From IMG/VR virus record IMGVR_UViG_3300046703_000335, positions 1 through 64,000 of that record: a stretch of DNA of 64,000 bases, one strand, 5' to 3'. How positions within the stretch are numbered: position 1 is the first letter of the stretch; every line of letters starts with the position of its first letter. The notes beneath the pieces were generated by a model that ran no database searches, was not told the origin of the DNA, and saw nothing but the letters and a program-made list of their open reading frames with translations. The position numbers and the translations under genes are program-made. Below, piece by piece: positions 7,351 to 64,000 of the stretch.

Positions 7351-10300
7351 TTATAATACACGTTCAATAACAGCATTTTGAATCAAAAGAATATTAGTTG
7401 CACTAGCCGTTTGCCATTGAGCGGTTATCTTTACTATTGGAGATACACTAGTAGTATCAACTACAGATGTAGCATCCCCACCCTGATATGCCTTTGTTTC
7501 TGCAGTATCTGAGGTATGTACTTGAAAAATCCCTGTTGATATATATGTTCCATTAGAACCTGTTGACCGTACTGTTGCGATGCCATAGAATTCCATAAAT
7601 GTCTGACTTATAGCTGTACCACTCGATGCTAATAAAATAGATTGACCAGCATTAGCTCCTATATACATCTTAAATGTTAAGGTACCTGAAGTAGCTTGAC
7701 TCTGAAGGGTACCAAAAAAATAAAATTTAAAAGTTGAACCAACAAACAAAGAACCCTGAGGTAAAGTGTATGTTAGAATAGTAGTTTCAGCGTCAGTATT
7801 TGAGACACTTATTTGCGTAGAAGCTGCGGTAATCCCAGAACTAACTCCCTGTATGCCTGTTAAACCAATTAATCCTGTCATGCCTTGAGAGCCGGTAACT
7901 CCTTGGGAACCTGTTAAGCCAATTAATCCGGTAGCTCCTTGAAAACCCACTAAACCGGTTAAGCCTTGAGAGCCAGTCTGACCGACTAACCCAGTTATAC
8001 CTTGAGACCCAGTTTCTCCTTGATCTCCTTGGTTACCATCAAGACCATCTATACCTTGTAAGCCGGTAGCTCCTTGAGTACCTGTCAACCCAATTAATCC
8101 AGTAGTACCTTGTATTCCCTGAAATCCAGTTTCACCAATAACTGAAAGGCCCGTGATACCTTGTGATCCCGTAATTCCTGTTATTGAAAGACCAGTGGCT
8201 CCCTGGGCACCAGTTTCACCCTTTACACCGGTAACACCAGAAAGACCTGTCAAACCCTGATGACCGGTTTCTCCCTGATCACCTTGACTACCATCTATAC
8301 CTTGTAAACCTGTAGTGCCTTGAGTACCCGTTAACCCAATTAAACCTGTAGTGCCTTGTATTCCTTGAGTACCAGTTATTCCCTGAGATCCAGTTTCCCC
8401 TATGACTGAAAAGCCTGTGATACCCTGAATACCTGTTTCACCCGTGATAGATAAACCTGTGATACCCTGAGTACCTGTTTCACCCTTCACACCTGTAACA
8501 CCGGAAAGACCTGTTAGTCCTATTAATCCTGTTTCTCCCTGTATTCCTTGAGATCCAGTAACTCCTTGTATCCCCTGAGCACCAGTTAGTCCTATTTTTC
8601 CAGTTTCTCCAACAATGGAAAGACCTGTAATTCCTTGAGAGCCTGTATTTCCAACTATACCAGTTTCTCCTATAATAGAAATACCGGTTGTTCCATGAGA
8701 GCCCGTCTGACCAATTACTCCGGTTATGCCTTGGAATCCTGTTTCTCCAACAATGGAAAGACCTGTAATTCCTTGGAACCCCATAATACCCTGAGAGCCC
8801 GTCTCACCTTGAGCCCCTGTTAATCCTATTATTCCTGAGGCACCTTGAATACCCGTTTCACCAACTATTGACAGTCCTGTGATACCTTGAGAACCGATTG
8901 TTCCTAAACCTGTTATTCCCTGGGCACCTGTAGCTCCTTGAAAACCTGTTTCACCTATAATAGAGAGACCTGTGATACCTTGAGTACCTGTCTCTCCTAT
9001 AACTCCGGTTGTTCCCTGAACACCTGTCCCACCAACCACAGATATGCCCGTTAAACCTTGAGTGCCTGTCTGACCGATTAACCCGGTTATACCTTGATCT
9101 CCTTGGTTACCATCAAGACCATCTATACCTTGTAAGCCTGTAGCTCCTTGAGTACCCGTCAACCCAATTAAACCAGTAGTGCCTTGTATTCCTTGAATAC
9201 CTGTTTCTCCCTGAGATCCAGTTTCTCCTATGACGGAAAGGCCCGTTACACCCTGATGACCGGTTATTCCCTGGAATCCTGTCTGACCAACTATTCCGGT
9301 TATTCCTTGAAACCCGGTTTCACCAATAACGGAAAGGCCTGTGATACCTTGTGACCCAGTTATTGAGAGACCTATGACTCCTTGAATACCGGTTTCACCC
9401 GTGATAGATAAACCTTGAATACCGGTTTCACCCTTCACACCTGTAACACCATAAAAACCGGTCAAGCCCTGATGACCGGTTTCTCCCTGATCACCTTGGT
9501 TACCATCAAGACCATCTATACCCTGTAAGCCTGTGGCTCCTTGAGTACCCGTCAACCCAATTAAACCAGTAGTACCTTGTATTCCTTGAGTACCTGTGAT
9601 ACCCTGAAATCCAGTTTCACCAATAACTGAAAGGCCTGTGATACCTTGGAATCCTGTCTGACCAACTATCCCGGTTATTCCTTGAAACCCAGTTTCACCA
9701 ATAACTGAAAGGCCCGTAATACCTTGTGACCCAGTTATTCCAGTTATTGAAAGACCTGTGGCTCCCTGGACACCGGTTTCACCCGTGATAGATAAACCTT
9801 GAATACCGGTTTCACCTTTCACACCTGTAACACCAGAAAGACCTGTTACTCCTATTAAGCCTGTTACTCCTTGAACTCCAGTTTCACTCTGTATACCTGT
9901 AATACCAATTACAGATGCACCGGTATAACCTTGAATACCGGTCAAGCCCTGAGAACCAGTTTCTCCAATAGCAGTTGCGGTACCAGGAATACCAGTGATT
10001 CCTTGAGAACCTGTATATCCAATCAGCCCTTGGATTCCCGTTTCTCCAACTACTGAATAACCTGTTATTCCCTGAGATCCCTGAGATCCCTGAGGTCCAA
10101 TTTCTCCAGATACCCCTGTATCTCCCTGAAAACCCATTGAGCCTTGAAGACCGGTATCTCCCTGTATGCCAATTTGACCCTGACAACCTGTAGGACCCGG
10201 TAAACCTGTATCTCCTTGAGGGCCACCAAATGCTCCAGTTATACCTACTAAGCCGGTCACCCCAACAATGGATAAACCTGTTTGACCCTGAGAACCTGTA

Positions 10301-43883: not shown

Positions 43884-44999
43884 TTAATTTTCTTCAAGAA
43901 TTCTTTTTAATCGAGTAGAACACTCTACAGAATCCGGCAGGGTATTAAAGTTGGGACGAACTCTCCGGTGGATATTTTTCCATAGTTTAAGACTATTTCC
44001 CTTATGATAATACATAAGATCTGAGACAAGATCTGGATATCGCTCAGTTACCATAAAAAACAAAGTTTTATGGCTTATGTCCGCAGGAATATCTTTCATA
44101 ACTTCCTCATAAGTTTCCTTAACCCTAATATAGTCATTATGGTGGATATCGTATATCTGCCGATACAAGAGGTCTGTAAGCTCTCTAAACTCTTCGGGTA
44201 CCTCTGCTATGAAACTACGGGGGATATCCGCTTTATCGAAGTCCCAGGCACCCCAGAATGATAGTAGAGTCATATGTGATAGAATTCTATGAATTTTACA
44301 GTATTCTGATCCCTTAACCTTAATCTTAAGACCATTGTGGAAAGTAATAACAAAACCCTCCTCAGTCGCCGGTAGAGTCTTACAATAAGCATATAACTCA
44401 TCCAGGCTATTGAACTCTACAGCCTCTACCACAGTGGCTCCTATGCGCTTTCCTTCCTCTTTAAGGGAGGTGTAGGATATCTCTTCTCCGGTTTCATTAT
44501 TGATGACACCTAAAAGTATCAAATCCTCTGTATCACCATAGTCTATTACAATTTTATTTTCTGGATAGACCATCTCAAAAAGATATGTATGCCCTTTAAG
44601 CATTTCTGTTGACCTTATATGCTTCCGGAACCATATAGTAGCCCACTGCGCCTGATCTGATAAGAAAGATCCCTTGGTCGCTATATAATCTTGACCTTCA
44701 TATCTAAAGTAAATCGCTAAGCTACCGTCAATCTTCTTAAGGGAAATAAAAGGCTTCTTCGCCAAGTCACAAAGATCAATCTTACCCATAAGCTCGGAGG
44801 CATTAAAGAATTTCTTAAAGGAACGTGAAACCACCTCTCCAGTGATCCTATTAAATATGATACCCCGTGCAGCCATAGTGATATCATCCCAATGCCCGTC
44901 ATATTGACATTCCCGTGAATAGCAAAAAAGAACAAGATCATTCCACTCAGTATGTCTGACATAAGGATGGTCATAAAATTTCTTAATATCAAAAGTCAT
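43884..44999 (-). CDS. T4 Rnl1-family RNA ligase
   Basis: ARGIIF, SFKKFFN, KIDGSL motif I, LFE, EEGFV, KIKVKG.EY. Confidence 0.9.
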   Translation of the reverse strand: MTFDIKKFYDHPYVRHTEWNDLVLFCYSRECQYDGHWDDITMAARGIIFNRITGEVVSRSFKKFFNASELMGKIDLCDLAKKPFISLKKIDGSLAIYFRYEGQDYIATKGSFLSDQAQWATIWFRKHIRSTEMLKGHTYLFEMVYPENKIVIDYGDTEDLILLGVINNETGEEISYTSLKEEGKRIGATVVEAVEFNSLDELYAYCKTLPATEEGFVITFHNGLKIKVKGSEYCKIHRILSHMTLLSFWGAWDFDKADIPRSFIAEVPEEFRELTDLLYRQIYDIHHNDYIRVKETYEEVMKDIPADISHKTLFFMVTERYPDLVSDLMYYHKGNSLKLWKNIHRRVRPNFNTLPDSVECSTRLKRILEEN

Positions 45000-50172: not shown

Positions 50173-50647
50173 TTATTATAAATTCTCTCATTTTTGGTAA
50201 GTATTTAATTACAAAGGTATCTGTATAGTACCATTTATCTTGAAGACACCTAAGCATATAAATACTTACTTTAAATGTATAAAAATTATAAGTGTCAAGT
50301 ATCGAATCCAATAGAAACTGATGAGTCTGAGAAACTTTACAAATATCTAACTCAATTAGTCTATCTCGAGTCCAACTTATTAAGTGCTCAGATTTAAACT
50401 TATTTGCTAATGTCAGAAACATCGTCTTATCTTCAGCTAATAATTCGTATTCATCATCTTTATACATATTAGAATACATATAGAGATACCATCGATATGT
50501 CCCGGGAACCAGATCCGGAGGAATATACCCTGGAACGTTATCATCCAATGAGCAATTCAGGTGATCAACTGATAATGCTAATAATCTATTTAAATATTCT
50601 GGATTAATCATTTCCACAGCCCTTAGGCTTGTATATGCCTTTTTCAC
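50165..50647 (-). CDS. Hypothetical protein
   Basis: ORF. Confidence 0.5.
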   Translation of the reverse strand: MKKAYTSLRAVEMINPEYLNRLLALSVDHLNCSLDDNVPGYIPPDLVPGTYRWYLYMYSNMYKDDEYELLAEDKTMFLTLANKFKSEHLISWTRDRLIELDICKVSQTHQFLLDSILDTYNFYTFKVSIYMLRCLQDKWYYTDTFVIKYLPKMREFIINE

Positions 50648-51479
50648 GAACTATTTTGTCATAATAATATACTGCGGGGACTCCTACTACTTCTACTCCA
50701 GTTTTAGTACGCTTGACAGTAGAATTATGGTTAAATTCATTCCTGGCTATATTACCTATTATTTTCATATCCTCAAAGCATGCAAAGACATTCCCACCTA
50801 AAGTATGCCCCCCAATAAGTATGGTCTTATATCCTCGAGTGCATGTACAAAAATCATTACACTTTTTATATTCAAAGTCTACAAGATACCAATCTTCTCC
50901 ATCATAATCCTTGACTTCATGGAAATCCTTGCCACGATCATACCCTTTAAAATCCTGAATCTTAAAAGGTATACCAAATGCCTTCCATTTACGTTTATTT
51001 TCTTTTATTACTTCCTTATCATTATGCACCAGTAGCTCTTTAACATATACGGGGACGCCATTATCATGAAGGAAGTGTACGTTGTCTTCGTACATTTTTA
51101 CTAAACTTGGAATATGACCCATCATTTTTCGATGAAAAGTAAATCCTACACGGTGTATCCTATCTTTATAGGGTAATAACCGTGCATAATTTTCACGACT
51201 CTGAAGGCCATTTGTGAGAAAATCAAAGCGTTCTATTGAAGTCGATCGAATAACTGTGCAGATAGTATTAATATTTGTGGAGATGAAAGGCTCACCACCG
51301 TGAAAATGCATCAAAATATCTTCAGCGGGTAAAAGATGTGTGTCCCTGAATAGTTTATATTGGTCAATTGAGAAAGATTGATGCTTTGTGTAATTAGAAT
51401 AGAAACGTTCATGATGGAAGCAATAACTGCAACGGAGATTACAGTCAAAAAAAATTGGGTATGCAATAAATAGCTTCAA
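50604..51479 (-). CDS. Radical SAM protein
   Basis: CNLRCSYC, FHGGEP, TNG; C-terminal Cys cluster. Confidence 0.85.
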   Translation of the reverse strand: MKLFIAYPIFFDCNLRCSYCFHHERFYSNYTKHQSFSIDQYKLFRDTHLLPAEDILMHFHGGEPFISTNINTICTVIRSTSIERFDFLTNGLQSRENYARLLPYKDRIHRVGFTFHRKMMGHIPSLVKMYEDNVHFLHDNGVPVYVKELLVHNDKEVIKENKRKWKAFGIPFKIQDFKGYDRGKDFHEVKDYDGEDWYLVDFEYKKCNDFCTCTRGYKTILIGGHTLGGNVFACFEDMKIIGNIARNEFNHNSTVKRTKTGVEVVGVPAVYYYDKIVREKGIYKPKGCGND

Positions 51480-51520
51480 AGTATATTATCTTTTATTTAT
51501 ATTATATGTTAATTTACAAA

Positions 51521-51921
51521 TGGAGGAGAGGGGAGTTGAACCCCTGTGTCAAGTATGATCCCTATTAATCTCTACATGCTTAGTTTAATTTGCACTACCC
51601 CTCTGTAAATATCAATTAAACAAAATTTTTAACAGAGTGCATTAAGTAATTTCGGTCCCCTTCTCTATTATGCTTTTCGGGTACCCTACTTCGTGATCTT
51701 TTAAGAGATCGGATCCCACGATTGTCCGATACTCTTTGCTACCTTTAATTAGGCAGCGATTGAGCTTGCAACACCTAAACTGATATTATCAGCAAAGGCG
51801 AGAGCAAACTTAACAGCATAATCTTTTGCAATTATACTTTAACGGATGATTTACGAGGCCAACCGTTATCCTCAACATGCAATTAATACTTCACCTACCT
51901 GATCGAAACCAGTACTCCCCC
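51521..51921 (-). ncRNA. ssrA: tmRNA with tag (A)AKDYAVKFALAFADNISLGVASSIAA*
   Basis: 5' GGGGGAGUACUGGUUUCGAUC; 3' GGGUUCAACUCCC-CUCCUCCA; G3:U70 pair; AUAAUU-GCA resume context; tag ORF 51749..51829. Confidence 0.93.
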
Positions 51922-52390: not shown

Positions 52391-53029
52391 TTAATTAACT
52401 CTACATATTTTAAAGTCCTTCAAGCTTATAAGATAATTTTCTTTTACACCAGTATCAACAAATCTTATTAAAGATTCTGTACCGACAATTACAGCCAAAA
52501 GTGCAGTATTGCGTGCAAGGGGATACTCACAAACATCTATCCCTGTACCTTTTTTAGGTACACGATATCTCTCGTTCCAGGTAACTTCTGCGCAATCCTC
52601 TGATAAGCCTATGTGCATACAATCGATCTTATTAACTAAGCAATGATCCATAACTATTTTACGACTCTCCGGATTATCAAAGCCATCAATTACTATCGAA
52701 TCAGCTTTTAAAAATTTTCGAACATTGGAAGCCTCAAGTTTTTTATCGATAGGATCTATAGTAACTTTCATAACATTGAAGAGATGTGACCGGATAGCTG
52801 CAACTTTCAGTTGACCTACATCCCGACTATTCCAAATTTGAGTATTTCGGTTATGTTCCTCTACTCTATCAAAATCGATTACAGTCATTCTCTGAAAACC
52901 CTGACGTACCAGATTATCTGCGAGGTTCGAACCGATCGCACCTACCCCGCATAACGTGATATGCTGTGCAGCTATCTTCTTTAAAAGATCTTCCCCACGG
53001 TAAGCTCCCTCATGTACAAAAGTTTTCAT
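52391..53029 (-). CDS. ThiF/E1-like ubiquitin-like-protein activating enzyme (ORF extends to 53065; likely start 53029)
   Basis: CGVGAIG, IDFDRVEEHN..TQ, GQLK, IDGFDN, DVCEYPLARN. Confidence 0.9.
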   Translation of the reverse strand: MKTFVHEGAYRGEDLLKKIAAQHITLCGVGAIGSNLADNLVRQGFQRMTVIDFDRVEEHNRNTQIWNSRDVGQLKVAAIRSHLFNVMKVTIDPIDKKLEASNVRKFLKADSIVIDGFDNPESRKIVMDHCLVNKIDCMHIGLSEDCAEVTWNERYRVPKKGTGIDVCEYPLARNTALLAVIVGTESLIRFVDTGVKENYLISLKDFKICRVN

Positions 53030-53598
53030 TATCTCACCTTTTTTATATTTTCTATGACATTGCATGCAATTAAAAAATCACTAAGATAATCCAAGTTATA
53101 CCTTGAAACTGCATATGTGGTCCCATTATTGTCTTGTTTTAATAATACTACCCAATGACTGAATGTCAATTCCATCCCAGGCAGAGCAGAGATATAGGGT
53201 CCCGATATAACATCCTGTTCCCAATTTGAATTTTCTTTCAATATCTTAAGAGTATGATGAATGAGATTCAGCCATTTTCTTTCCTCAAGAAGATCTTCCA
53301 AAAAAACATGAGGGTATCCTTCCCAATCATCAATAGGCTCCAATTCATATACAAAAAAGTCAGTCTCATATCCTGTTCGGGGTATTCTAACAGTATTGCT
53401 TATAGCTCGATTACCAGACAGCATTTCATTGTAAATATTACGAATTTTAGGATGCCATTCCTTGTTTATATACAAAGGCAATTCCAATTTTTGTAAGTTA
53501 CTCAGAAAGTATAAATCTTCCACCATCTGGTAACTATTAATTCTCGTCAGATGTCTTGTTAAATTTTCAAAATCTATACTATGAGAATATGTAAACAT
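53029..53598 (-). CDS. Hypothetical protein
   Basis: TAATG-coupled to the ThiF gene. Confidence 0.55.
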   Translation of the reverse strand: MFTYSHSIDFENLTRHLTRINSYQMVEDLYFLSNLQKLELPLYINKEWHPKIRNIYNEMLSGNRAISNTVRIPRTGYETDFFVYELEPIDDWEGYPHVFLEDLLEERKWLNLIHHTLKILKENSNWEQDVISGPYISALPGMELTFSHWVVLLKQDNNGTTYAVSRYNLDYLSDFLIACNVIENIKKVR

Positions 53599-54225: not shown

Positions 54226-54314
54226 TTTTACTCCAATACAAAAAAGCTAATGAATGCAAATTTCTATAGTTCATTCTACTATTTAATATACTATTTTAAA
54301 ATTAGCTATACAAT

Positions 54315-54350
54315 AAAAAAGAAAGGGGAAGACTTTTCCCGGTCTTCCCC
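54315..54350 (-). terminator. Rho-independent terminator downstream of the tRNA-mimic RNAs
   Basis: 9-bp stem GGGGAAGAC/GTCTTCCCC plus U-tract. Confidence 0.85.
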
Positions 54351-54397
54351 CTCAAATTATATCTCACCCGAGAGTTGTAATCTCAGGATTAGATAGT

Positions 54398-54560
54398 GAT
54401 GGTCAATAAATAATACCCTCGCCCTTTATAATAAGTCTCCCACTCTACCGCTGAGCTATAGACCCCCGAAGTTATCTATTACAAAATAACTTAGAGGGTC
54501 TAAATGGATTTGAACCACTGACAGGAGTGTTTTAAGGCTACCTATTCTTTATTAACCACC
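54398..54560 (-). ncRNA. YrlA-like Y RNA 2 (circularly permuted tRNA mimic)
   Basis: Order T arm (AGTGG-TTCAAAT-CCATT), acceptor TAGACCC/GGGTCTA closed by a hairpin, D arm (GCTC-AGCGGTA-GAGT); 13-bp terminal stem GGTGGTTAATAAA/TTTATTGACCATC; no anticodon loop. Confidence 0.75.
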
Positions 54561-54624
54561 TTCAATTTTGAATCTTGGACATTCAAAACACTAATCATCA
54601 ACTTAAATCTGGTATGCAAAAAAA

Positions 54625-54755
54625 TAAAAATAATCTTTTGCCTTTTACAGAAGTACTCTACCAAACTGAGCTACCTTCTCCATATTTTTTAGGGGAGAAG
54701 GAGAGGAATCGAACCTCCGCGTCTTCTGATATAGAAAAAGACAAAAGTGCTTTTA
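54625..54755 (-). ncRNA. YrlA-like Y RNA 1 (circularly permuted tRNA mimic, His-like acceptor)
   Basis: T arm GGAGG-TTCGATT-CCTCT, acceptor CCTTCTC-C/G-GAGAAGG closed by a short linker, D arm GCTC-AGTTTGGTA-GAGT; ends pair (CTTCTG/CAGAAG, then CTTTTGTCTTTT/AAAAGGCAAAAG). Confidence 0.75.
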
Positions 54756-54776: not shown

Positions 54777-55550
54777 CTAATTAACTTTAAACCCCTGATT
54801 AATATAATTAAAAAATTTCAGTCCAACTTTTGCTGACTCAGTTTCCTGAGCATTTGCTTTTGACCGGGCGATCTTCACACCAGAGATCAGGCAATCAATA
54901 CGATTGAGCAACTGACTCTTCTGTTTTGGAGATAAACCTCCACTAGCGTAGGTTTGTGTCCAAGTTCCAACTGCTTCATCCGACATAACAATCTCAGTTT
55001 GTGCTTGAAACTTATCAGTAGCTTCAGCCTTGGTAATAACCTTTGGAATTTTCTTTGTTCTGATACGTTCTATTGGTTCAGATTTCCATACCCCTGTTCG
55101 AGTTACATCATCTGACCAAACCTTTGAGGGATCAATTGTAGGAATCTCTTCATAGACCTTCCTAACTCTTTCCAGAGCGGATTCCATCTGTACCAGAAAT
55201 GTTACAGGGGCCTTTTCAAGAATAATCTCTGTAGTGCCATCAGGAAGCTCTACAACGACATCCGCAGAGGCACTCTGATTACCACGTTCTTTCTGAAGTT
55301 CAATATCAATAAAACGAACTATCGATGCTTGAGAATAATCAAGTTTATCCTTAACTGTTGTGACCATAGGAGTAAACTCTTCATCAGGGCGATCCTTATC
55401 CTGGTCATTGAAAGGAGAATAACTCTTACGTGATTCAATGAAGTGTGCCGAGCGCTGATTGAATGTTTTAAGAGTTTCATCAATAATCTTGGCAAAGACA
55501 TCCTTTGCATCTTTTTCTACTGCAAGAAGCTCATACAATTTACCACCCAT
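54777..55550 (-). CDS. Conserved helical hypothetical protein directly upstream of the Y RNAs
   Basis: SD GGAGG; KL.ELLAVEK N-terminus, coiled-coil ends. Confidence 0.7.
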   Translation of the reverse strand: MGGKLYELLAVEKDAKDVFAKIIDETLKTFNQRSAHFIESRKSYSPFNDQDKDRPDEEFTPMVTTVKDKLDYSQASIVRFIDIELQKERGNQSASADVVVELPDGTTEIILEKAPVTFLVQMESALERVRKVYEEIPTIDPSKVWSDDVTRTGVWKSEPIERIRTKKIPKVITKAEATDKFQAQTEIVMSDEAVGTWTQTYASGGLSPKQKSQLLNRIDCLISGVKIARSKANAQETESAKVGLKFFNYINQGFKVN

Positions 55551-55710: not shown

Positions 55711-56904
55711 TTATCTCTGAGCAGTATTATTCTTACCTGCCATTCCCATATTAATACCGAGATCCATAGCTGTCTTAGCATTCAGCATATTAATGAGATC
55801 AGTTGCTCCATTTGCACCTTTACTATTTTCACCCATAATAACAGAAGGAACCCAGTTACCTTTATATTCAGAGATAGCTTTAGCATAATTAGCGTTAACT
55901 TCTTTATAAGCCTCTAATTTTTTATCCAAAGCACCATCAGCTGTCATAACAAGTTTCTTACGTTCAGCCTCTCCCTGCCCCAGAAGAATCTGTTCTGCTT
56001 TCTTAAATTCAGCAGCCTCTTTGTTAAGTTTAGCAACCTCTTTTTCTTGCTCCCCAAGAGTGACTGCGCGCGCCTTGACAACTTCCTGTTCCCAGCGACT
56101 TCTTGCAGCATTAGCCTCCCCCTGCTTTGCAACAGTAATTGCATTCTGTTCTGCTTTTTTAGCATCGGCTATTGAAGTTTGAACATCCATAGTAATCTGC
56201 TGTTGACTCTGAATTTGCTTTTCAATTGCCCCATCATAAGGGAGGGCATTAATCGCGAAGTTAAATGTTTTTATGCCAAAAATAGCCATAGCAGCATCTT
56301 CTTGACGTTCAGGCACTCCATTTTTCATTATTATATCAACTACAGTTACGGTTTTTTCAGCGCCAGTCATTTGGTCTATAGTCTTTGCTTCCTTAGAAAC
56401 AGTTCGGTACACACCATTTTGAATCTGATCCTCTACATACTGAATAAGATAGTTTCTTTTTTCGGCATATGACTCTTTGGAAGACATAAGTGGTCCAGTC
56501 ATATAAATGGCTTTATTTACTACTGTTGCTACTAACTGATTTTCAAGAGCTTGGATGCTACCAAATTTTGAATGAATATTAGAAAGATTAATGGGATCCA
56601 CAGGTAATTCATAACTTACACTGCCGTCCATTGTTCCATGTCCACCATCATTAAATCTTACTTGAGTTTTAAAGGAGTATATTTCTCTTTTAGGGTACTT
56701 AGATACCTTACCAAAACCTTGCCATTTTACACCGGCAGTTACATGCCAGGTAAGCTTACCAGAAATCGGACTTTGAACTACTAAGATCTGATTAGCATTA
56801 TTGACCTCAACAAATTGAAAAATTGACCACAAGCCTATTATGCATATGATCCCCCCAACGATTAATTTAAAAACTCCAGCAGGACTTTCCTGGGCTCTTG
56901 CCAT
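55711..56904 (-). CDS. SPFH/Band-7 (prohibitin-like) membrane protein
   Basis: N-terminal TM, SPFH core, Ala/Glu-rich coiled-coil. Confidence 0.85.
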   Translation of the reverse strand: MARAQESPAGVFKLIVGGIICIIGLWSIFQFVEVNNANQILVVQSPISGKLTWHVTAGVKWQGFGKVSKYPKREIYSFKTQVRFNDGGHGTMDGSVSYELPVDPINLSNIHSKFGSIQALENQLVATVVNKAIYMTGPLMSSKESYAEKRNYLIQYVEDQIQNGVYRTVSKEAKTIDQMTGAEKTVTVVDIIMKNGVPERQEDAAMAIFGIKTFNFAINALPYDGAIEKQIQSQQQITMDVQTSIADAKKAEQNAITVAKQGEANAARSRWEQEVVKARAVTLGEQEKEVAKLNKEAAEFKKAEQILLGQGEAERKKLVMTADGALDKKLEAYKEVNANYAKAISEYKGNWVPSVIMGENSKGANGATDLINMLNAKTAMDLGINMGMAGKNNTAQR

Positions 56905-58969: not shown

Positions 58970-59344
58970 TTACCTAATCTCCCGAATCTCTATAATATCA
59001 GGATTTTTACATTCCATAAATTGAAGTCTAGCTCTTCCAAGACTATTCAAAGTACCTACAAATTCTTTTAGTAATGCTTTTGACTCTTCTGAATATTTAT
59101 CTGCGGGTATAGAGAATAGTGTAATATAGAGTTTTAATCGATGATCCTTTTTTTCAGTAAGTTTTGAAAAGTAATCTTTTAGCTTCTTATCACTATCTAA
59201 AATGAACTCACGAAAGCCTTCATGTTGAACTTTTATGGTATAATCTACTTTCTCGGAAAAGCTTAAAGTAGCCCACTCAAGTGGAAGAAGATTACTATAT
59301 GCACTCTTATCAGATCTTTTTTTAAGCATCATGCCTCCTATCAA
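58970..59344 (-). CDS. Hypothetical protein
   Basis: ORF. Confidence 0.5.
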   Translation of the reverse strand: MIGGMMLKKRSDKSAYSNLLPLEWATLSFSEKVDYTIKVQHEGFREFILDSDKKLKDYFSKLTEKKDHRLKLYITLFSIPADKYSEESKALLKEFVGTLNSLGRARLQFMECKNPDIIEIREIR

Positions 59345-59861
59345 AATGAGGAAGTCTCACTTCACTTAGCATATACCAACCCTCATCAATATACTTAAAT
59401 ATCCTAAAATACCCTGTTCCTTTTAATCTACTTAGAATCTTTGAAAATTGATATTTAATCTTTATTTGATTCATAGCCTGAACACCAGTAAGATTAAACA
59501 AGGTATTTAATATATGCGCAGAATATGATTGACTAGTAGTCCTATATACAGCTTTTAGCAAAGCTATCTCAAAAGGGTCACAATATTGTTTTAGCTCTTT
59601 AAATATTTTTTCTGAATCACCTTCACACAATCTATCTAAAGTTTCAAGAAAAGTTACCCGGGCACGTAATTTTGCCAATCGATGTGAGATAGCCCCCTGG
59701 GTCAATCCTGTAATGTCTGCTATTTCAACTTGCCCTAAATTAAAGATACAATAGTACTTGTAAATGTCACGTTCTAAAGAAGGTATCTTATCATAGAATC
59801 TTAAGAAATTCTCATAAGATATCTGAGATGCATTAGCATTGCTATGTTGGCTCAGCATCAT
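59322..59861 (-). CDS. Sigma-70 region-4-like HTH protein
   Basis: QVEIADITGLTQGAISHRL.K.R. Confidence 0.65.
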   Translation of the reverse strand: MMLSQHSNANASQISYENFLRFYDKIPSLERDIYKYYCIFNLGQVEIADITGLTQGAISHRLAKLRARVTFLETLDRLCEGDSEKIFKELKQYCDPFEIALLKAVYRTTSQSYSAHILNTLFNLTGVQAMNQIKIKYQFSKILSRLKGTGYFRIFKYIDEGWYMLSEVRLPHFDRRHDA

Positions 59862-60035: not shown

Positions 60036-60893
60036 TTATTGAACATTATTAAATCGATGCAACACACCCGTCTGTTGAGCTTCCCTAACCACAGTGATTA
60101 AGCTCTTCAAGTCAAACCTGTGATCATTTCCAGATAAACAAATACCTGCGGCAATGACCATTCGCTTGTTATCTTTCGAAATATGGCTGGTGAACTCCTC
60201 ACCATCCACCTTATATGTCACACTAAAGTGGTCACTTCTTTCTACGAACCGAACAAACTCTCCCCCGGCATGTTCCACATCTTTTTTTAAGACATTTTCT
60301 TTCTTATCCTCCAAAAACCTTTTATCAAAGGTCGTTCGAAGAGAATAAGCCATTTTTTCCTCAAATGAGAGATTTGCAAACTTAATCTCACCAGGGTCCA
60401 CTAACTTTTCCAAACTATCCCGAAGATATTCCGCTTTAGTAGGGTCATTCCCTGTATCTACACTCTCAAACCAGAAATTAGCACCGTCATAACGAACGAT
60501 AACACGGTCAAAATTCATGACCGTATCATCAAATAATAGCACCGGTATCAGCCCACGGAATGGCAACCCATATTTATTAGCCTTATCCGGGATAGCTAGG
60601 AATTCTTTGTCTCTTCTCAGAGTCAGAGTCACTCTTAGCCTACCAAGACGGCGTAAATAGAGCTCACGTTCAGTAAAGTCTGCATCACCGGTTATTTTAG
60701 CAGAAATAGAATTTAAAGGGCGGATTTTATACCACCCAGGATCAACATTAGGAACTTTGAATGTATATACCAGCCCATCGATAGTAGTTACTACAGAGTT
60801 ATTATAGAAAATAGGAGAAATGAACTCCAGATTTGTGATCTGTTGTTCTTTCCTTCCTAAATTACTAATAATATCAAGGACATTAATAGACAT
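60036..60893 (-). CDS. Conserved hypothetical protein adjacent to the TROVE gene
   Basis: GGAG SD; C-terminal AAGICLSG.D..FDL.SL..V.RE. Confidence 0.7.
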   Translation of the reverse strand: MSINVLDIISNLGRKEQQITNLEFISPIFYNNSVVTTIDGLVYTFKVPNVDPGWYKIRPLNSISAKITGDADFTERELYLRRLGRLRVTLTLRRDKEFLAIPDKANKYGLPFRGLIPVLLFDDTVMNFDRVIVRYDGANFWFESVDTGNDPTKAEYLRDSLEKLVDPGEIKFANLSFEEKMAYSLRTTFDKRFLEDKKENVLKKDVEHAGGEFVRFVERSDHFSVTYKVDGEEFTSHISKDNKRMVIAAGICLSGNDHRFDLKSLITVVREAQQTGVLHRFNNVQ

Positions 60894-60908: not shown

Positions 60909-62471
60909 TTACCTAAAAGATCCACGAGAAATCAAAGGCGTTTCCATGATCTCGAAAACCAGGTCAAGCTTAGATTTACGAGATAAAAGAGGGATCAATC
61001 CCGGTAATGCATAATAATCATTACCTTCAGGGGTATAGATATCATATTCAATACCCGCCCTCTTCAAGTTACTAGAAAAGGTATTATCCGCAGGTCCTAT
61101 ATGAATGATCACCACATTTGGACGAACATTAAATGTCTTTGCATACTGTTCGTACACTGTAGTAAACATAGGACTAGCATTTTCACCCTCATCCGTTATC
61201 ACCACAATAGTTTCCACACTCTTTTTCTTTAACAACAAATAATTAAGTGCACAACCCATCGAAGTTGACCCTCCGGCACGTATGGGTCTAAATGCATTCT
61301 CCCAGTCGGTCAAAGAAGTTCCTTTTGCCTCAATCACTGCTGGAGTTGTATCAAATGCTACCACAGTAAGTTCTGCTATTGTAGCACCAGAAATCAATGC
61401 TGCGGTATTCTTACCAACTTCAATTGCTTTATCCATTGATCCGGACCGGTCAACAAATACAGCGGTTGATACTGAAATCTGACCACTCTTTTTGACCTGA
61501 GCATCTGCTACTTTATCCAATTGTGCTAAAACATCTACATCAAGGATACGACCAGTTTTAGCAGCTGTTTTGGACTTAAGTGTCGACACATTCTTTGACT
61601 TTTCAGCCTTTTTCAATTTTTCCTGAATAAGTGCTTTTGTAGCTTCATTAGCCATAGCACCCTTCTCTTCAAGAGAAGCCATGTTATTAATGACTTCCAT
61701 AGAAGACATGCTATTGATAAGAGCCACGAGTATAGTTGGAGTAATTTTATCGATCAACCCAATTGCGATCGTATATGGAATTTTATTTTCCACAATCATC
61801 TTTGCTGCATCAGCCGGTTCTGCTTCTGATATCTTTTTCAAGATAGTCAGCTTAGAGTCTTCTGGTATTTTCCCATCAAAAAGAATAGCTTGAGCTTGTG
61901 CTGAAGGTTTTACTTTAATTTTCTTGTAAAGGCTCTTCAAATCAGCTCGATTCTTCAAAGCGACTGTATCAAATCGATCCTTATCCGCTTCCAACCAACG
62001 CAAATAATTTTTGATTTCAGTTTCAAAAGAGGAAGTGGTATTTCTTTTCATACCTACAGTCTTCTCTTCGATCCGAACTTCATCGATTGACTTCTTATCG
62101 ATCTTGATCTTTTTACCTGTCTTTATCCGAATCTTAACCTTTTTACCTCGGATAAAACCAAGTATTTTATTCTTCATGAAAACCGCATGTTTTCTGAAAA
62201 GAGCAAGACCGACTTCACGATTATCGATAAAGGGATCCGTAATAAGCATGGCTGCAAAGATCTCGTTATGATCCCTGATCTCGCCCTTAGCGAGATACCA
62301 GCAAGCAAGATGCGCATAGAACAACGGATCATTATCCCGAATATCCTCATGGATCTTTTTTAAAACGTCCGTATCACGATGAGGACAAGTCATGAATGAA
62401 TTGAGCACCCTAACACGGATATCCCCTTCAACTACAGGAGCTGCAGGGGGAATAACTCTACGAGTTGTCAT
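60909..62471 (-). CDS. Ro60-like TROVE-vWA domain protein
   Basis: PHRD..., DPLFYAHLA.WY...G.IRDH helical region, IPYTIAIG, ELNNM-like EVINNM, vWA MIDAS VDRSGSM...GST...ITDEGEN. Confidence 0.8.
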   Translation of the reverse strand: MTTRRVIPPAAPVVEGDIRVRVLNSFMTCPHRDTDVLKKIHEDIRDNDPLFYAHLACWYLAKGEIRDHNEIFAAMLITDPFIDNREVGLALFRKHAVFMKNKILGFIRGKKVKIRIKTGKKIKIDKKSIDEVRIEEKTVGMKRNTTSSFETEIKNYLRWLEADKDRFDTVALKNRADLKSLYKKIKVKPSAQAQAILFDGKIPEDSKLTILKKISEAEPADAAKMIVENKIPYTIAIGLIDKITPTILVALINSMSSMEVINNMASLEEKGAMANEATKALIQEKLKKAEKSKNVSTLKSKTAAKTGRILDVDVLAQLDKVADAQVKKSGQISVSTAVFVDRSGSMDKAIEVGKNTAALISGATIAELTVVAFDTTPAVIEAKGTSLTDWENAFRPIRAGGSTSMGCALNYLLLKKKSVETIVVITDEGENASPMFTTVYEQYAKTFNVRPNVVIIHIGPADNTFSSNLKRAGIEYDIYTPEGNDYYALPGLIPLLSRKSKLDLVFEIMETPLISRGSFR

Positions 62472-63374: not shown

Positions 63375-63432
63375 ATCCGTGCTATCCTAAAATATTTAAA
63401 AAATTACGCAGAAGTTAGGGATGCTAATTTTT

Positions 63433-63508
63433 TGGCTTCTAATGATGGACTTGAACCATCGACGCATTTCTTATAAGGAAATTGCCCTACCAACTGGGCT
63501 AATTAGAA
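63433..63508 (-). tRNA. tRNA-Ile(UAU), CCA encoded
   Basis: TTCTAAT/ATTAGAA acceptor, GCCC D stem, ATTTC-CT TAT AA-GAAAT, GATGG-TTCAAGT-CCATC, G73-CCA. Confidence 0.88.
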
Positions 63509-63551
63509 AATGTAAGCAACCAAAGTAATTGCGTAATTTTTATTATTGTTT

Positions 63552-63576
63552 GTTTCAATCCGCGCTTTTCAGCGAC
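63552..63576 (-). CRISPR. Solitary minimised type I-C-like repeat unit 1
   Basis: GTCGCTGAAAAGCGCGGATTGAAAC. Confidence 0.55.
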
Positions 63577-63733
63577 TATATAAAAATGAGCTAATATAAG
63601 AATCTCTACCTAAGTCGTTCGTACTATATGATGACCAGATACCCATACTGGGCAGTGATCATCAAGTTTTTTTTACCCAAAAAAAATGTAAGTCCAAACT
63701 ATAATGGTAAAAATTCTATTAATTCGTTTGTTC

Positions 63734-63758
63734 GTTTCAATCCACGCTTTTCAGCGAC
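63734..63758 (-). CRISPR. Solitary minimised type I-C-like repeat unit 2
   Basis: GTCGCTGAAAAGCGTGGATTGAAAC. Confidence 0.55.
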
Positions 63759-63798
63759 TGTACAAAAGTAAAAAAGTTGAAACTACAGAAGTCGTGCA

Positions 63799-63873
63799 TG
63801 CTAGTCTGAGGGATTTGAACCCCCTACCTATTGATTAGAAGTCAATTGCTCTACCAAATGAGCTAATGTAAGC
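63799..63873 (-). pseudogene. Pseudo-tRNA-Arg(UCU) with disrupted acceptor stem
   Basis: Intact D, anticodon (ATTGA-CT TCT AA-TCAAT) and T arms; 5' GCTTACAT pairs only 4/8 with AGACTAGC. Confidence 0.7.
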
Positions 63874-63889
63874 CTTCACTGTAATTGTA

Positions 63890-63922
63890 GTTTCAACCAA
63901 GTACCCTATTCATCAGGGTTAC
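63890..63922 (-). CRISPR. Solitary CRISPR-repeat-like unit 3 (different type)
   Basis: GTAACCCTGATGAATAGGGTACTTGGTTGAAAC: 5-bp hairpin ACCCT/AGGGT plus TTGAAAC end. Confidence 0.4.
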
Positions 63923-64000
63923 ATCTTAATAATACTAAATAATTTTATATTATGCAAATACTATTTTAAAATGAAATCCAATGGATATATAATATAGATC

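What the first reader, a model, noticed from the sequence alone, without database searches (positions are those of the whole stretch)
54398..54755. Two tandem circularly permuted tRNA mimics (YrlA-type Y RNAs)
Seen: each RNA runs T arm, acceptor stem closed by a linker, then D arm. The 5' and 3' ends pair as a long stem in place of the anticodon arm, and there is no anticodon loop. RNA 2's terminal stem (UGGUUAAU/AUUGACCA) resembles the Y-RNA Ro-binding helix. RNA 1 has His-like G-1:C73 followed by CCU. Established: bacterial YrlA RNAs have this topology and bind Ro60, and a Ro60-like gene lies 6 kb away. tRNA scanners would likely miss or mis-split them.
Basis: partly seen in the sequence, partly recalled or inferred. 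Interest (0 to 1): 0.85.

Follow-up and report, generated by a model that had tools for sequence, protein, structure and literature searches.

The report
Phage tRNA-mimic Y-like RNA pair
Two neighbouring small RNA genes in a 210-kb phage genome fold like transfer RNAs whose ends have been moved, the design of bacterial 'Y RNAs' that partner the Ro60 protein, and the phage also encodes a very divergent Ro60-like protein; binding between them is untested.

Summary
On the minus strand, 54747..54635 (RNA 1) and 54560..54398 (RNA 2) each fold as T arm, loop-closed 7-bp acceptor stem, D arm, with the 5' and 3' ends paired in a long stem and no anticodon loop. A strict scan finds exactly these two in 64 kb (0.01 expected). 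Both RNAs are conserved after the same gene (DUF7873) in four further phage lineages, with compensatory changes well above controls. Rfam's YrlA model hits RNA 1 and orthologues of both RNAs over its full length, but only at 30-38 bits against a threshold of 69.

The 520-aa ORF 6 kb upstream is Ro60-like by predicted fold only; Pfam and NCBIfam do not recognise it.

- The YrlA 5' motif GNCGAAN0-1G is absent.
- The RNAs lie beyond the 4-kb rule used to call YrlA.
- Ro binding is untested.
- The phage has other candidate Ro partners. Directly upstream of the Ro-like gene, here and in every related phage with upstream sequence held (about 20, 36-86% Ro identity), lie arrays of a conserved two-helix scaffold carrying real tRNAs, tRNA bodies without acceptor stems, permuted tRNAs, or nothing.

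Verdict: a real, divergent YrlA-type variant.

The parts
54635..54747 (-). RNA 1 core (113 nt). Terminal stem 54747..54736 pairs with 54646..54635. The helix in the anticodon-stem position is 54728..54723 with 54653..54648.
   Evidence: RNAfold. Rfam YrlA full-length alignment 54741..54629, 29.5 bits, E 3e-4. Conserved in L017, L024, L025 and L026.
54702..54718 (-). RNA 1 T arm (GGAGG, loop UUCGAUU, CCUCU)
   Evidence: Compensatory changes at 2 of 5 pairs.
54674..54701 (-). RNA 1 acceptor stem closed by a linker: 7 bp plus G-1:C73. The linker begins CCU, is A-rich and ends AU.
   Evidence: The G-1:C73 pair is present in all five lineages, and the linker is conserved in sequence.
54655..54671 (-). 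RNA 1 D arm (GCUC, loop AGUUUGGUA, GAGU), preceded by U8 A9
54620..54634 (-). U-rich tail after RNA 1's terminal stem (conserved UUAUYUUUA). It could be a weak terminator or a single-stranded 3' tail.
   Evidence: Alignment A4. The terminator scan did not call it.
54566..54619 (-). Conserved spacer between the two RNAs: motif UUGCAUACCAG (54619..54609) and an 8-bp hairpin (54588..54566)
   Evidence: Nearly invariant between the window and L017-L019, and conserved in L024 and L025. Function unknown.
54398..54560 (-). RNA 2 core (163 nt). The 13-bp terminal stem is 54560..54548 with 54410..54398. Two further helices lead to the anticodon-stem-like helix, 54527..54523 with 54441..54437.
   Evidence: RNAfold z -4.1. 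RNAalifold consensus of 54 pairs. 92.2% of cells paired; 19 pairs changed on both sides against 7.0 +/- 1.9 in shuffles (0 of 500) and 2-8 when partners are slid. The L025 orthologue hits Rfam YrlA at 30.0 bits.
54503..54519 (-). RNA 2 T arm (AGUGG, loop UUCAAAU, CCAUU)
54459..54502 (-). RNA 2 acceptor arm: 7-bp acceptor stem continued by a 9-bp extension hairpin (about 20 bp in all, closed)
   Evidence: Helix 6 is 96.6% paired, with 4 pairs changed on both sides.
54442..54456 (-). RNA 2 D arm (GCUC, loop AGCGGUA, GAGU)
54312..54353 (-). Strong intrinsic terminator (12-bp stem, then a U tract) downstream of RNA 2. It is the only canonical terminator of the unit.
   Evidence: The equivalent hairpin plus U tract is present in L017, L024, L025 and L026.
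54777..55550 (-). DUF7873 gene (257 aa) immediately upstream. The RNA pair follows this gene in all five lineages.
   Evidence: Pfam PF25283, E 3e-68. Synteny.
60909..62471 (-). Ro60-like gene (520 aa): alpha-helical ring domain plus a C-terminal vWA domain with an intact MIDAS motif
   Evidence: AlphaFold2 pLDDT 82.7. Foldseek top 13 hits are all Ro60/Rsr/TROVE. A profile search of PDB finds only TROVE proteins, weakly (E 0.35). D341, S343, S345, T403 and D427 are invariant. No TROVE HMM hit.
63399..63898 (-). Context: three scaffold cassettes upstream of the Ro-like gene. 63898..63775 carries a tRNA body without an acceptor stem. 63715..63601 carries non-tRNA cargo. 63541..63399 carries tRNA-Ile(UAU).
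   Evidence: The third cassette (63715..63601) was found by eye and then folded.

Best explanation
The locus encodes two conserved, structured non-coding RNAs of the YrlA design. Each is a tRNA elbow (T arm, D arm and a loop-closed acceptor stem) mounted on a long stem formed by the RNA's own 5' and 3' ends, with no anticodon.

Most likely mechanism (inferred):
1. The RNAs are made from one unit that ends at the strong terminator at 54353..54322.
2. They fold into L-shaped tRNA mimics.
3. They serve as Y-RNA-type adaptors. The terminal stem docks on the phage's divergent Ro60-like ring. The tRNA-like module recruits or occupies a tRNA-recognising or RNA-decay factor such as host PNPase, as in the Ro60-Y RNA-PNPase complexes of Deinococcus and of Thermus phage phiLo. 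This would retune RNA decay or quality control in the infected cell.
4. Both acceptor stems are 7 bp, and RNA 1 carries G-1:C73 followed by CC. RNase P cleavage in the linker followed by CCA completion, as seen for Mycobacterium smegmatis YrlA, is therefore plausible.

Shown here: the fold, its conservation and covariation, the similarity to the YrlA model, and the presence of a Ro60-fold gene. Inferred: transcription, Ro binding, the partner protein and processing.

The confidence of 0.55 is for the whole statement. I put about 0.85 on 'conserved YrlA-type tRNA mimics' and about 0.45 on 'partners of the Ro-like protein'.
For: Fold and chance.
- Unconstrained folds give the topology.
- Two strict hits in the window against 0.01 expected.

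Conservation.
- The pair is conserved downstream of DUF7873 in lineages whose Ro-like proteins are 86, 77, 71 and 70% identical to the window's.
- RNA 2: 92.2% of cells paired; 19 pairs changed on both sides against 7.0 +/- 1.9 (0 of 500 shuffles); 2-8 in slid controls.
- RNA 1 core: 94.1% paired; 5 pairs against 2.5; 0-1 in slid controls.
- tRNA tertiary positions are present in both: U8, A14, G15 with C48, G18 G19, and the UUCRA T loop (read).

Family similarity.
- Rfam YrlA aligns over model positions 1-114 at 29.5, 38.2, 31.9 and 30.0 bits.

Ro link.
- The Ro60 fold of ORF 60909..62471 and its invariant MIDAS residues.
- In relatives with 36-63% Ro identity, YrlA-type and other permuted tRNA modules lie within about 2 kb upstream of the Ro-like gene, on the same strand in all but L009.

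Precedents.
- YrlA-related sequences were reported in 22 phages, and M. smegmatis YrlA is cleaved by RNase P and receives CCA (PMC4201824).
- Phage phiLo Ro60 binds two phage Y-like RNAs and host PNPase (PMC12135203).
Against: - All YrlA scores are far below the gathering score of 69, and RNA 2 in the window gets no YrlA hit at E up to 10.
- The GNCGAAN0-1G motif thought to contact Ro60 is absent from RNA 1. In RNA 2 the equivalent place reads AAAGAAUAG. CGAA is present there in only two of five lineages.
- The RNAs track the DUF7873 gene, not the Ro-like gene, at 4-10 kb from it.
- Their terminal stems lack the motifs of the cassettes that sit directly upstream of the Ro-like gene. Those cassettes may be the true Ro partners.
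- There are no expression, binding or processing data.
- The MFE folds of three RNA 1 orthologues misfold the T arm.
- Only five lineages support the covariation, and they are related.
Confidence: 0.55

Rival explanations
1. The RNAs are tRNA mimics that work without Ro. They would act as decoys, sponges or substrates for tRNA-recognising proteins such as RNase P, CCA-adding enzyme, modification enzymes, HisRS, or host tRNA-targeting defence nucleases. They might work together with the adjacent DUF7873 protein. RNase P would open the acceptor linker and give two-piece, CCA-ended, tRNA-like molecules.
For: - The pair is syntenic with DUF7873 in all five lineages, while its distance to the Ro-like gene varies from 4 to 10 kb.
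- No Ro-binding 5' motif is present.
- The acceptor stems are 7 bp, the main RNase P determinant according to PMC4201824.
- RNA 1's G-1:C73 pair and CC-containing linker are conserved in sequence, which suggests the linker itself is read by something.
- The phage has separate cassette RNAs next to the Ro-like gene.
Against: - The same permuted design is tied to Ro60 wherever it has been studied (PMC4201824).
- In distant relatives of this phage, the YrlA-type modules sit inside the Ro-adjacent arrays.
- DUF7873 has no known function and no hit in PDB, PHROGs, NCBIfam or PADLOC.
- This explanation is not exclusive of Ro binding.
Confidence: 0.27
2. They are circularly permuted pre-tRNA genes, as in the red alga Cyanidioschyzon merolae. 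The ends would be joined (the phage has an Rnl1-type RNA ligase) and the acceptor linker opened to give decoding tRNAs.
For: - A closed acceptor stem and paired 5'/3' ends are also the layout of permuted pre-tRNAs (bioRxiv 10.1101/312249, discussion).
- An Rnl1-like ligase is encoded at 43884..44999.
- Relatives do carry whole tRNAs permuted at the variable arm with intact anticodon arms.
Against: - In RNA 1 and RNA 2 the helix in the anticodon-stem position runs on into 12-30 further base pairs with internal loops, and there is no 7-nt anticodon loop anywhere.
- Joining the ends would not create one.
- No bulge-helix-bulge motif is present, and no bacterial splicing endonuclease is known.
Confidence: 0.03
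3. They are pieces of a two-piece (permuted) tmRNA, or decayed tandem tRNA genes with no function.
For: - Partial hits to beta_tmRNA and tmRNA_permuted cover the T arm and acceptor (11-25 bits).
- Chen 2014 warns that tRNA dimers can mimic YrlA.
Against: - These hits are far below threshold (84 and 47 bits) and cover only the tRNA-like part. There is no tag reading frame or pseudoknot.
- The phage has a complete one-piece tmRNA at 51518..51921 (133 bits).
- No tRNA halves flank the elements.
- Conservation with compensatory changes across five lineages argues against decay.
Confidence: 0.02

Closest known systems
YrlA (Rfam RF02553): the Y RNA-like tRNA mimics of Salmonella, Mycobacterium smegmatis and mycobacteriophages (Chen et al. 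2014; Wang et al. 2018)
   Same: - Module order is T arm, loop-closed acceptor stem, D arm.
- The 5' and 3' ends pair in a stem that leaves from the anticodon-stem position; there is no anticodon loop.
- tRNA elbow nucleotides are kept.
- The gene is on the same strand as a Ro60-type gene, and more than one Y-like RNA occurs per locus.
- Like M. smegmatis YrlA, the acceptor stem is 7 bp.
   Different: - Scores are 30-38 bits against a gathering score of 69.
- The GNCGAAN0-1G motif is absent.
- There is no V hairpin.
- The RNAs lie 6.2-6.5 kb from the Ro-like gene, with about 14 genes between, and always follow DUF7873.
- RNA 2 has a 20-bp acceptor arm and a three-tier terminal stem.
- The partner protein is not recognised by the TROVE HMM.
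Ro60 of Thermus phage phiLo with Yrl1 and Yrl2 (PDB 9KOP, 9L5Y; NAR 2025, PMC12135203)
   Same: A phage-encoded Ro60-fold protein with two phage-encoded Y-like RNAs. This structure is among the best fold matches (E 3e-10) and is the only sequence-profile match in PDB.
   Different: - The phiLo RNAs lie directly upstream of the gene, were picked by a CGAA motif in a stem-bulge-stem, and are not described as tRNA-like.
- Here there is about 14% identity over the fold alignment, no CGAA in the window's RNAs, and a tRNA-mimic module.
Deinococcus radiodurans Yrn1 with Rsr and PNPase (the RYPER complex)
   Same: A long terminal stem plus a module with a T-arm-like hairpin. It serves as the model for how a Y RNA tethers Ro to an effector.
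   Different: Yrn1 has the opposite arm order, with an anticodon-arm-like hairpin between D-like and T arms. In the window that layout is seen in the cassette at 63898..63775, not in RNA 1 or RNA 2.
Circularly permuted tRNA genes of Cyanidioschyzon merolae and some archaea
   Same: The 3' half precedes the 5' half, the acceptor stem is closed in the precursor, and the ends are paired.
   Different: Those precursors regenerate an anticodon loop after end-joining and are matured by splicing endonuclease. RNA 1 and RNA 2 have no anticodon loop and no bulge-helix-bulge motif.

Membership tests
YrlA (RF02553; Chen et al. 2014) | tRNA-like domain in the order T arm, acceptor stem-loop, D arm, with the 5'/3' ends paired in a stem at the anticodon-stem position | tested here: met
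   Unconstrained folds, RNAalifold consensus and covariation counts.
YrlA (RF02553; Chen et al. 2014) | Conserved tRNA-type nucleotides that allow the elbow and the Levitt pair (U8, A14, G15:C48, G18 G19, T loop UUCRA) | tested here: met
   Read directly from the sequence and from alignments A4 and A5. This is by sequence only; no 3D test was made.
YrlA (RF02553; Chen et al. 2014) | Score at or above Rfam's gathering threshold (69 bits) | tested here: not met
   RNA 1 scores 29.5 bits and RNA 2 gets no hit. Orthologues score 38.2, 31.9 and 30.0 bits. All alignments span the whole model, and each is the only YrlA match listed in its locus.
YrlA (RF02553; Chen et al. 2014) | GNCGAAN0-1G motif near the 5' end (proposed Rsr contact) | tested here: not met
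   Absent from RNA 1 in all five lineages. In RNA 2 the equivalent place reads AAAGAAUAG; L017 has GACGAAUAG and L025 has AUCGAAGG.
YrlA (RF02553; Chen et al. 2014) | Encoded within 4 kb of the Ro60 orthologue, on the same strand | tested here: not met
   The strand is the same. The distance is 6.2-6.5 kb in the window and 4-10 kb in the four relatives.
YrlA (RF02553; Chen et al. 2014) | Bound by Rsr/Ro60 in vivo; carries tRNA modifications | not testable with these tools
   This needs immunoprecipitation or gel shift, and modification mapping.
Ro60 / Rsr (TROVE plus vWA) for ORF 60909..62471 | Ring of alpha-helical repeats followed by a vWA domain with a MIDAS site | tested here: met
   The AlphaFold2 model (pLDDT 82.7) has Ro60/Rsr/TROVE as its top 13 fold matches over the whole length. 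DxSxS, T and D are invariant in 39 homologues.
Ro60 / Rsr (TROVE plus vWA) for ORF 60909..62471 | Match to the TROVE sequence model | tested here: not met
   Pfam gives only a weak VWA_2 hit, and NCBIfam and PHROGs give none. A profile search of PDB gives TROVE proteins at E 0.35.
Permuted pre-tRNA genes | An anticodon loop is restored when the paired ends are processed and joined | tested here: not met
   No 7-nt loop on a 5-bp stem exists in either RNA. The stem continues for 12-30 bp.
Two-piece tmRNA | Tag reading frame, pseudoknots, and a model score above threshold | tested here: not met
   Only partial hits of 11-25 bits against thresholds of 84 and 47. A complete tmRNA is present elsewhere in the window.

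The most novel reading that the evidence does not exclude
RNA 1 and RNA 2 may be one branch of an undescribed system in huge phages. In it, a very divergent Ro60-like ring protein is encoded next to arrays of a modular RNA scaffold.

The scaffold has these parts:
- an outer stem of 10-21 bp;
- a conserved internal loop, reading YYUAAC or AUUAC on the 5' side and AACUY on the 3' side;
- an inner helix closed by GC/GC pairs, followed by UACA.

Its cargo varies:
- bona fide tRNAs;
- tRNA bodies without an acceptor stem;
- whole tRNAs circularly permuted at the variable arm that keep an anticodon loop;
- YrlA-type mimics;
- nothing.

On this reading, the phages would deliver tRNAs and tRNA look-alikes as Y-RNA-like particles. 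Possible uses are Ro-gated tRNA maturation or protection, or anticodon-bearing decoys against host tRNA-cleaving defences.
Probability: 0.3. Interest if true: 0.85.

Novelty: new variant of a known kind. Interest (0 to 1): 0.6.

Why it matters
Y RNAs and Ro60 are conserved from bacteria to humans, yet what the tRNA-like half of bacterial Y RNAs binds is still unknown. This locus extends the design to huge phages, where the partner protein is so divergent that sequence models miss it. Y-RNA systems are therefore probably under-counted in viral genomes.

RNA 1 has a 7-bp acceptor stem, and its linker is conserved and resembles the tRNA-His acceptor end. This makes one specific question testable: are some Y RNAs opened by RNase P and completed with CCA?

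The cassette arrays next to the Ro-like gene, if they bind it, would connect Ro60 directly to the handling of real tRNAs. They would also supply dozens of natural scaffold variants for working out the RNA-recognition rules of a Ro protein.

Tried and rejected
- DNA similarity of the locus to GenBank phages: no match.
- Exact-pattern scans with a 21-nt conserved stretch of RNA 2: only the window itself in IMG/VR, and one unrelated chance hit in metagenomes (L022).
- A search for relatives of the DUF7873 protein in IMG/VR found only the window itself.
- phmmer of the Ro-like protein against PDB gave nothing useful. Only the profile search and the fold search did.
- The conserved 285-aa gene just downstream of the Ro-like gene: no family hit. 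Its AlphaFold2 model had pLDDT 61, and no fold match had E below 0.001.
- DUF7873: no hit in PDB, PHROGs, NCBIfam or PADLOC.
- A relaxed version of my permuted-module scan (6 of 7 acceptor pairs) had too much background, 24 hits against about 4 in shuffles. I replaced it with the strict version.
- RNAalifold on the MAFFT alignment of RNA 1 did not recover the terminal stem because the stem is misaligned. I inspected it in single-sequence folds only.
- I considered whether the 25-nt direct repeat ending AUUGAAAC between the cassettes mimics a host CRISPR repeat. It is absent from relatives, and the only genome hit lies inside a coding region. The idea is not supported.
- I considered whether the motif before each cassette cargo is a promoter. 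I rejected this because G-U pairs in the flanking stems require that the 5' arm be transcribed.
- I did not build my own covariance model. The long variable insertions made a MAFFT-based model unpromising.
Full report
**Where the window comes from.** It is the first 64 kb of IMG/VR contig IMGVR_UViG_3300046703_000335 (210 kb). It has about 35% G+C, and nearly all genes lie on the minus strand. It carries a one-piece tmRNA and tRNA genes. It is a jumbo-phage genome.

**The observation.** The two elements lie on the minus strand.

RNA 1 (core 54747..54635) folds without constraints as follows (-35.3 kcal/mol, z -2.2):
- a 12-bp terminal stem;
- a 6-bp helix in the anticodon-stem position;
- a 4-nt variable-loop equivalent that ends in C;
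- a T arm with loop UUCGAUU;
- a 7-bp acceptor stem plus a G-1:C73 pair, closed by a linker that begins CCU, is A-rich and ends AU;
- U8 A9, then a D arm with loop AGUUUGGUA, and back through the stems.

RNA 2 (core 54560..54398) has the same plan (-55.1 kcal/mol, z -4.1). It differs in having a 13-bp terminal stem, two extra helices, and an acceptor arm lengthened by a 9-bp hairpin.

Neither RNA has an anticodon loop. ARAGORN and the Rfam tRNA model report nothing here. A strict pattern scan of my own finds exactly these two sites in the window. In 300 dinucleotide-preserving shuffles the mean was 0.01 and none had two hits.

**Conservation.** The 520-aa ORF 60909..62471 has 480 homologues, many on contigs of 100-470 kb. 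I fetched loci around them.
- In four further lineages the RNA pair lies directly after the DUF7873 gene, as in the window. These are L017 (86% identical Ro-like protein), L026 (77%), L024 (71%) and L025 (70%). The spacer hairpin and a terminal terminator are conserved too.
- For RNA 2 the RNAalifold consensus has 54 pairs. On it, 92.2% of cells are paired. Nineteen pairs show changes on both sides, against 7.0 +/- 1.9 in column shuffles (0 of 500) and 2-8 when the partners are slid by 1-3 columns.
- For the T, acceptor and D helices of RNA 1, 94.1% of cells are paired. Five pairs show changes on both sides, against 2.5 in shuffles and 0-1 in slid controls.
- The terminal stem of RNA 1 is kept in every lineage in single-sequence folds, but MAFFT misaligns it.
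- Five related sequences are few, so these numbers support the structure but do not prove it.

**Comparison with YrlA.** Rfam's YrlA model aligns over its whole length to RNA 1 in the window (29.5 bits, E 3e-4 for the 751-nt search). It also aligns to RNA 1 of L024 (38.2 bits), RNA 1 of L026 (31.9 bits) and RNA 2 of L025 (30.0 bits). In each of these 21-kb loci the only YrlA match listed lies at these RNAs. None reaches the gathering score of 69.

Chen et al. (PMC4201824) define the family by four things:
- the T/acceptor/D domain;
- a GNCGAAN0-1G motif near the 5' end;
- location within 4 kb of the Ro60 gene on the same strand;
- binding to Rsr.

The first is met. The motif is absent from RNA 1, and RNA 2 has AAAGAAUAG at the equivalent place; CGAA occurs there in only two of five lineages. 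The distance is 6.2-6.5 kb here and 4-10 kb in relatives. Binding cannot be tested with these tools.

Its sequence is not conserved: the 3' strand reads UUAAUUAC in L017 and UUGAUCAU in L024.

**The Ro60-like gene.** Pfam gives only a weak VWA_2 hit, and NCBIfam, PHROGs and PADLOC give nothing.
- A profile of 39 homologues finds only TROVE proteins in PDB, at E 0.35.
- The AlphaFold2 model (pLDDT 82.7) matches Ro60, Rsr and phage phiLo Ro60 as its top 13 fold hits over the full length (E 3e-10 to 4e-8, TM 0.49-0.64, 11-14% identity). Isolated vWA domains follow.
- The MIDAS residues are invariant.
- Among GenBank phages the only homologue is in LR756511.1, an unannotated 595-kb uncultured phage.

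So a Ro60-fold gene does lie 6 kb away, but it is a lineage that sequence models miss.

**What else is next to the Ro-like gene.** This changes how strongly the Ro link can be claimed.
- Directly upstream of the Ro-like gene lie arrays of 2-7 cassettes. I found them in the window and in every related locus examined that has upstream sequence. They are on the gene's strand in every locus except L009.
- Each cassette has five parts in order. First comes an outer stem of 10-21 bp with G-U pairs. Next is a 5' loop that begins YYUAAC, or AUUAC in the window's clade. Then comes GCNUACA, then a cargo of 30-135 nt. Last is a 3' segment that begins GC and ends AACUY, just before the complementary stem arm.
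- The 5' loop and the 3' segment form an inner helix that I did not use to find the cassettes. It has 4.75 of 7 pairs on average, against 3.63 +/- 0.14 when partners are swapped among 48 cassettes.
- Of 49 well-formed cassettes, 22 carry tRNAs that ARAGORN calls. Fourteen carry permuted tRNA-like modules. The other 13 mostly carry tRNA bodies without acceptor stems.
- The permuted cargos are of two kinds. Some are YrlA-like. Others are whole tRNAs opened at the variable arm, with a closed acceptor stem and an intact anticodon arm; L027 7199-7357 and L028 9263-9415 fold this way without constraints.
- LR756511.1 also has cassettes, two of them almost empty. These look like minimal Y RNAs.
- Other tRNA clusters in the same phages lack the scaffold (L007, L008).
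- In the window the cassettes are 63898..63775 (a tRNA body matching Rfam tRNA positions 7-64), 63715..63601 (non-tRNA cargo, found by eye) and 63541..63399 (tRNA-Ile UAU).
- Rfam has no family for the scaffold.
- RNA 1 and RNA 2 do not carry the scaffold motifs.

**Interpretation.** Topology, covariation and model similarity make RNA 1 and RNA 2 genuine YrlA-type tRNA mimics. I put about 0.85 on that statement.

Whether they partner the Ro-like protein is less certain, at about 0.45.
- For the link: the design is tied to Ro60 elsewhere. In distant relatives YrlA-type modules lie in the Ro-adjacent arrays. Phage phiLo shows a phage Ro60 binding two phage Y-like RNAs and host PNPase (PMC12135203).
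- Against the link: the motif is missing, the pair is syntenic with DUF7873 rather than with the Ro-like gene, and the cassettes are alternative partners.

The main rival is a Ro-independent tRNA mimic, possibly opened by RNase P. That is reasonable because both acceptor stems are 7 bp and RNA 1's G-1:C73-CC end and linker are conserved. It matches what happens to M. smegmatis YrlA.

Maturation into decoding tRNAs, a two-piece tmRNA, and decayed tRNA dimers are all disfavoured by the sequence.

**Novelty.** YrlA-like RNAs in phages have been known since 2014, and TROVE proteins have been noted in some jumbo phages (PMC7824862). I found no paper describing tRNAs or permuted tRNAs embedded in a conserved scaffold next to a Ro-like gene.

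The finding itself is a divergent variant of a known kind. The surrounding cassette system is the more novel lead.

Noticed in passing
window 63399-63898 (-); L002, L004-L009, L011, L013, L015-L017, L023-L028, L030 upstream of the Ro-like gene: Arrays of a conserved two-helix RNA scaffold lie directly upstream of the Ro-like gene. The scaffold is an outer stem, then a 5' loop beginning YYUAAC or AUUAC, then GCNUACA, the cargo, a 3' segment from GC to AACUY, and the closing stem arm. Cargo is a real tRNA, a tRNA body without an acceptor stem, a permuted tRNA-like module, or almost nothing. Other tRNA clusters in the same phages lack the scaffold. There is no Rfam family and I found no paper.
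   Followed up: partly
L004 9352-9510, L007 9443-9598, L008 ~9525-9680, L009 (- strand, cassettes at 8944 and 8742), L027 7199-7357, L028 9263-9415: Some cassette cargos are whole tRNAs circularly permuted at the variable arm. The acceptor stem is closed by a short loop, and the D, anticodon and T arms are intact. Anticodon loops read as Ser, Leu or Val types. As encoded, they cannot be aminoacylated.
   Followed up: partly
window 63807-63866 (-): A tRNA-like body with D arm, anticodon arm (loop CUUCUAA) and T arm but no acceptor stem. It matches Rfam tRNA positions 7-64 at 51.3 bits and ARAGORN does not call it. Equivalents occur in L004 8423-8478, L026 8536-8594 and L025 8938-8994.
   Followed up: partly
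window 63734-63758 and 63552-63576 (-): Two copies of a 25-nt direct repeat lie 182 nt apart and flank the middle cassette. The repeat has a small GAAA-loop hairpin and ends AUUGAAAC, like a CRISPR repeat. It is absent from relatives, and no CRISPR array with it was found in representative genomes.
   Followed up: yes
window 51518-51921 (-): A complete one-piece tmRNA (Rfam 133 bits) with an unusually long predicted tag of 26 residues ending in AA. A relative (L005) also carries a tmRNA.
   Followed up: no
window 43884-44999, 50604-51479, 52391-53065, 55711-56904, 59322-59861 (all -): Neighbouring genes are an Rnl1-type RNA ligase, a radical SAM protein, a ThiF/E1-like protein, an SPFH/Band 7 protein and a sigma-factor-like protein. 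Relatives have a JAB-domain gene near the E1-like gene. Together with the tRNAs, tmRNA and Ro-like gene this forms an island of RNA and translation functions.
   Followed up: no
window 60036-60893 (-): A 285-aa gene immediately downstream of the Ro-like gene. It is kept close downstream of the Ro-like gene in six of the fetched relatives (56-77% identity) and matches no family or fold. It is a candidate partner of the Ro-like protein.
   Followed up: partly
window ~54273-54300 (-) and ~63950-63975 (-); L017, L024, L026: A recurring motif AUUUUAAAA(A/U)AGUAU lies upstream of genes and of the cassette array. It may be a phage promoter.
   Followed up: no
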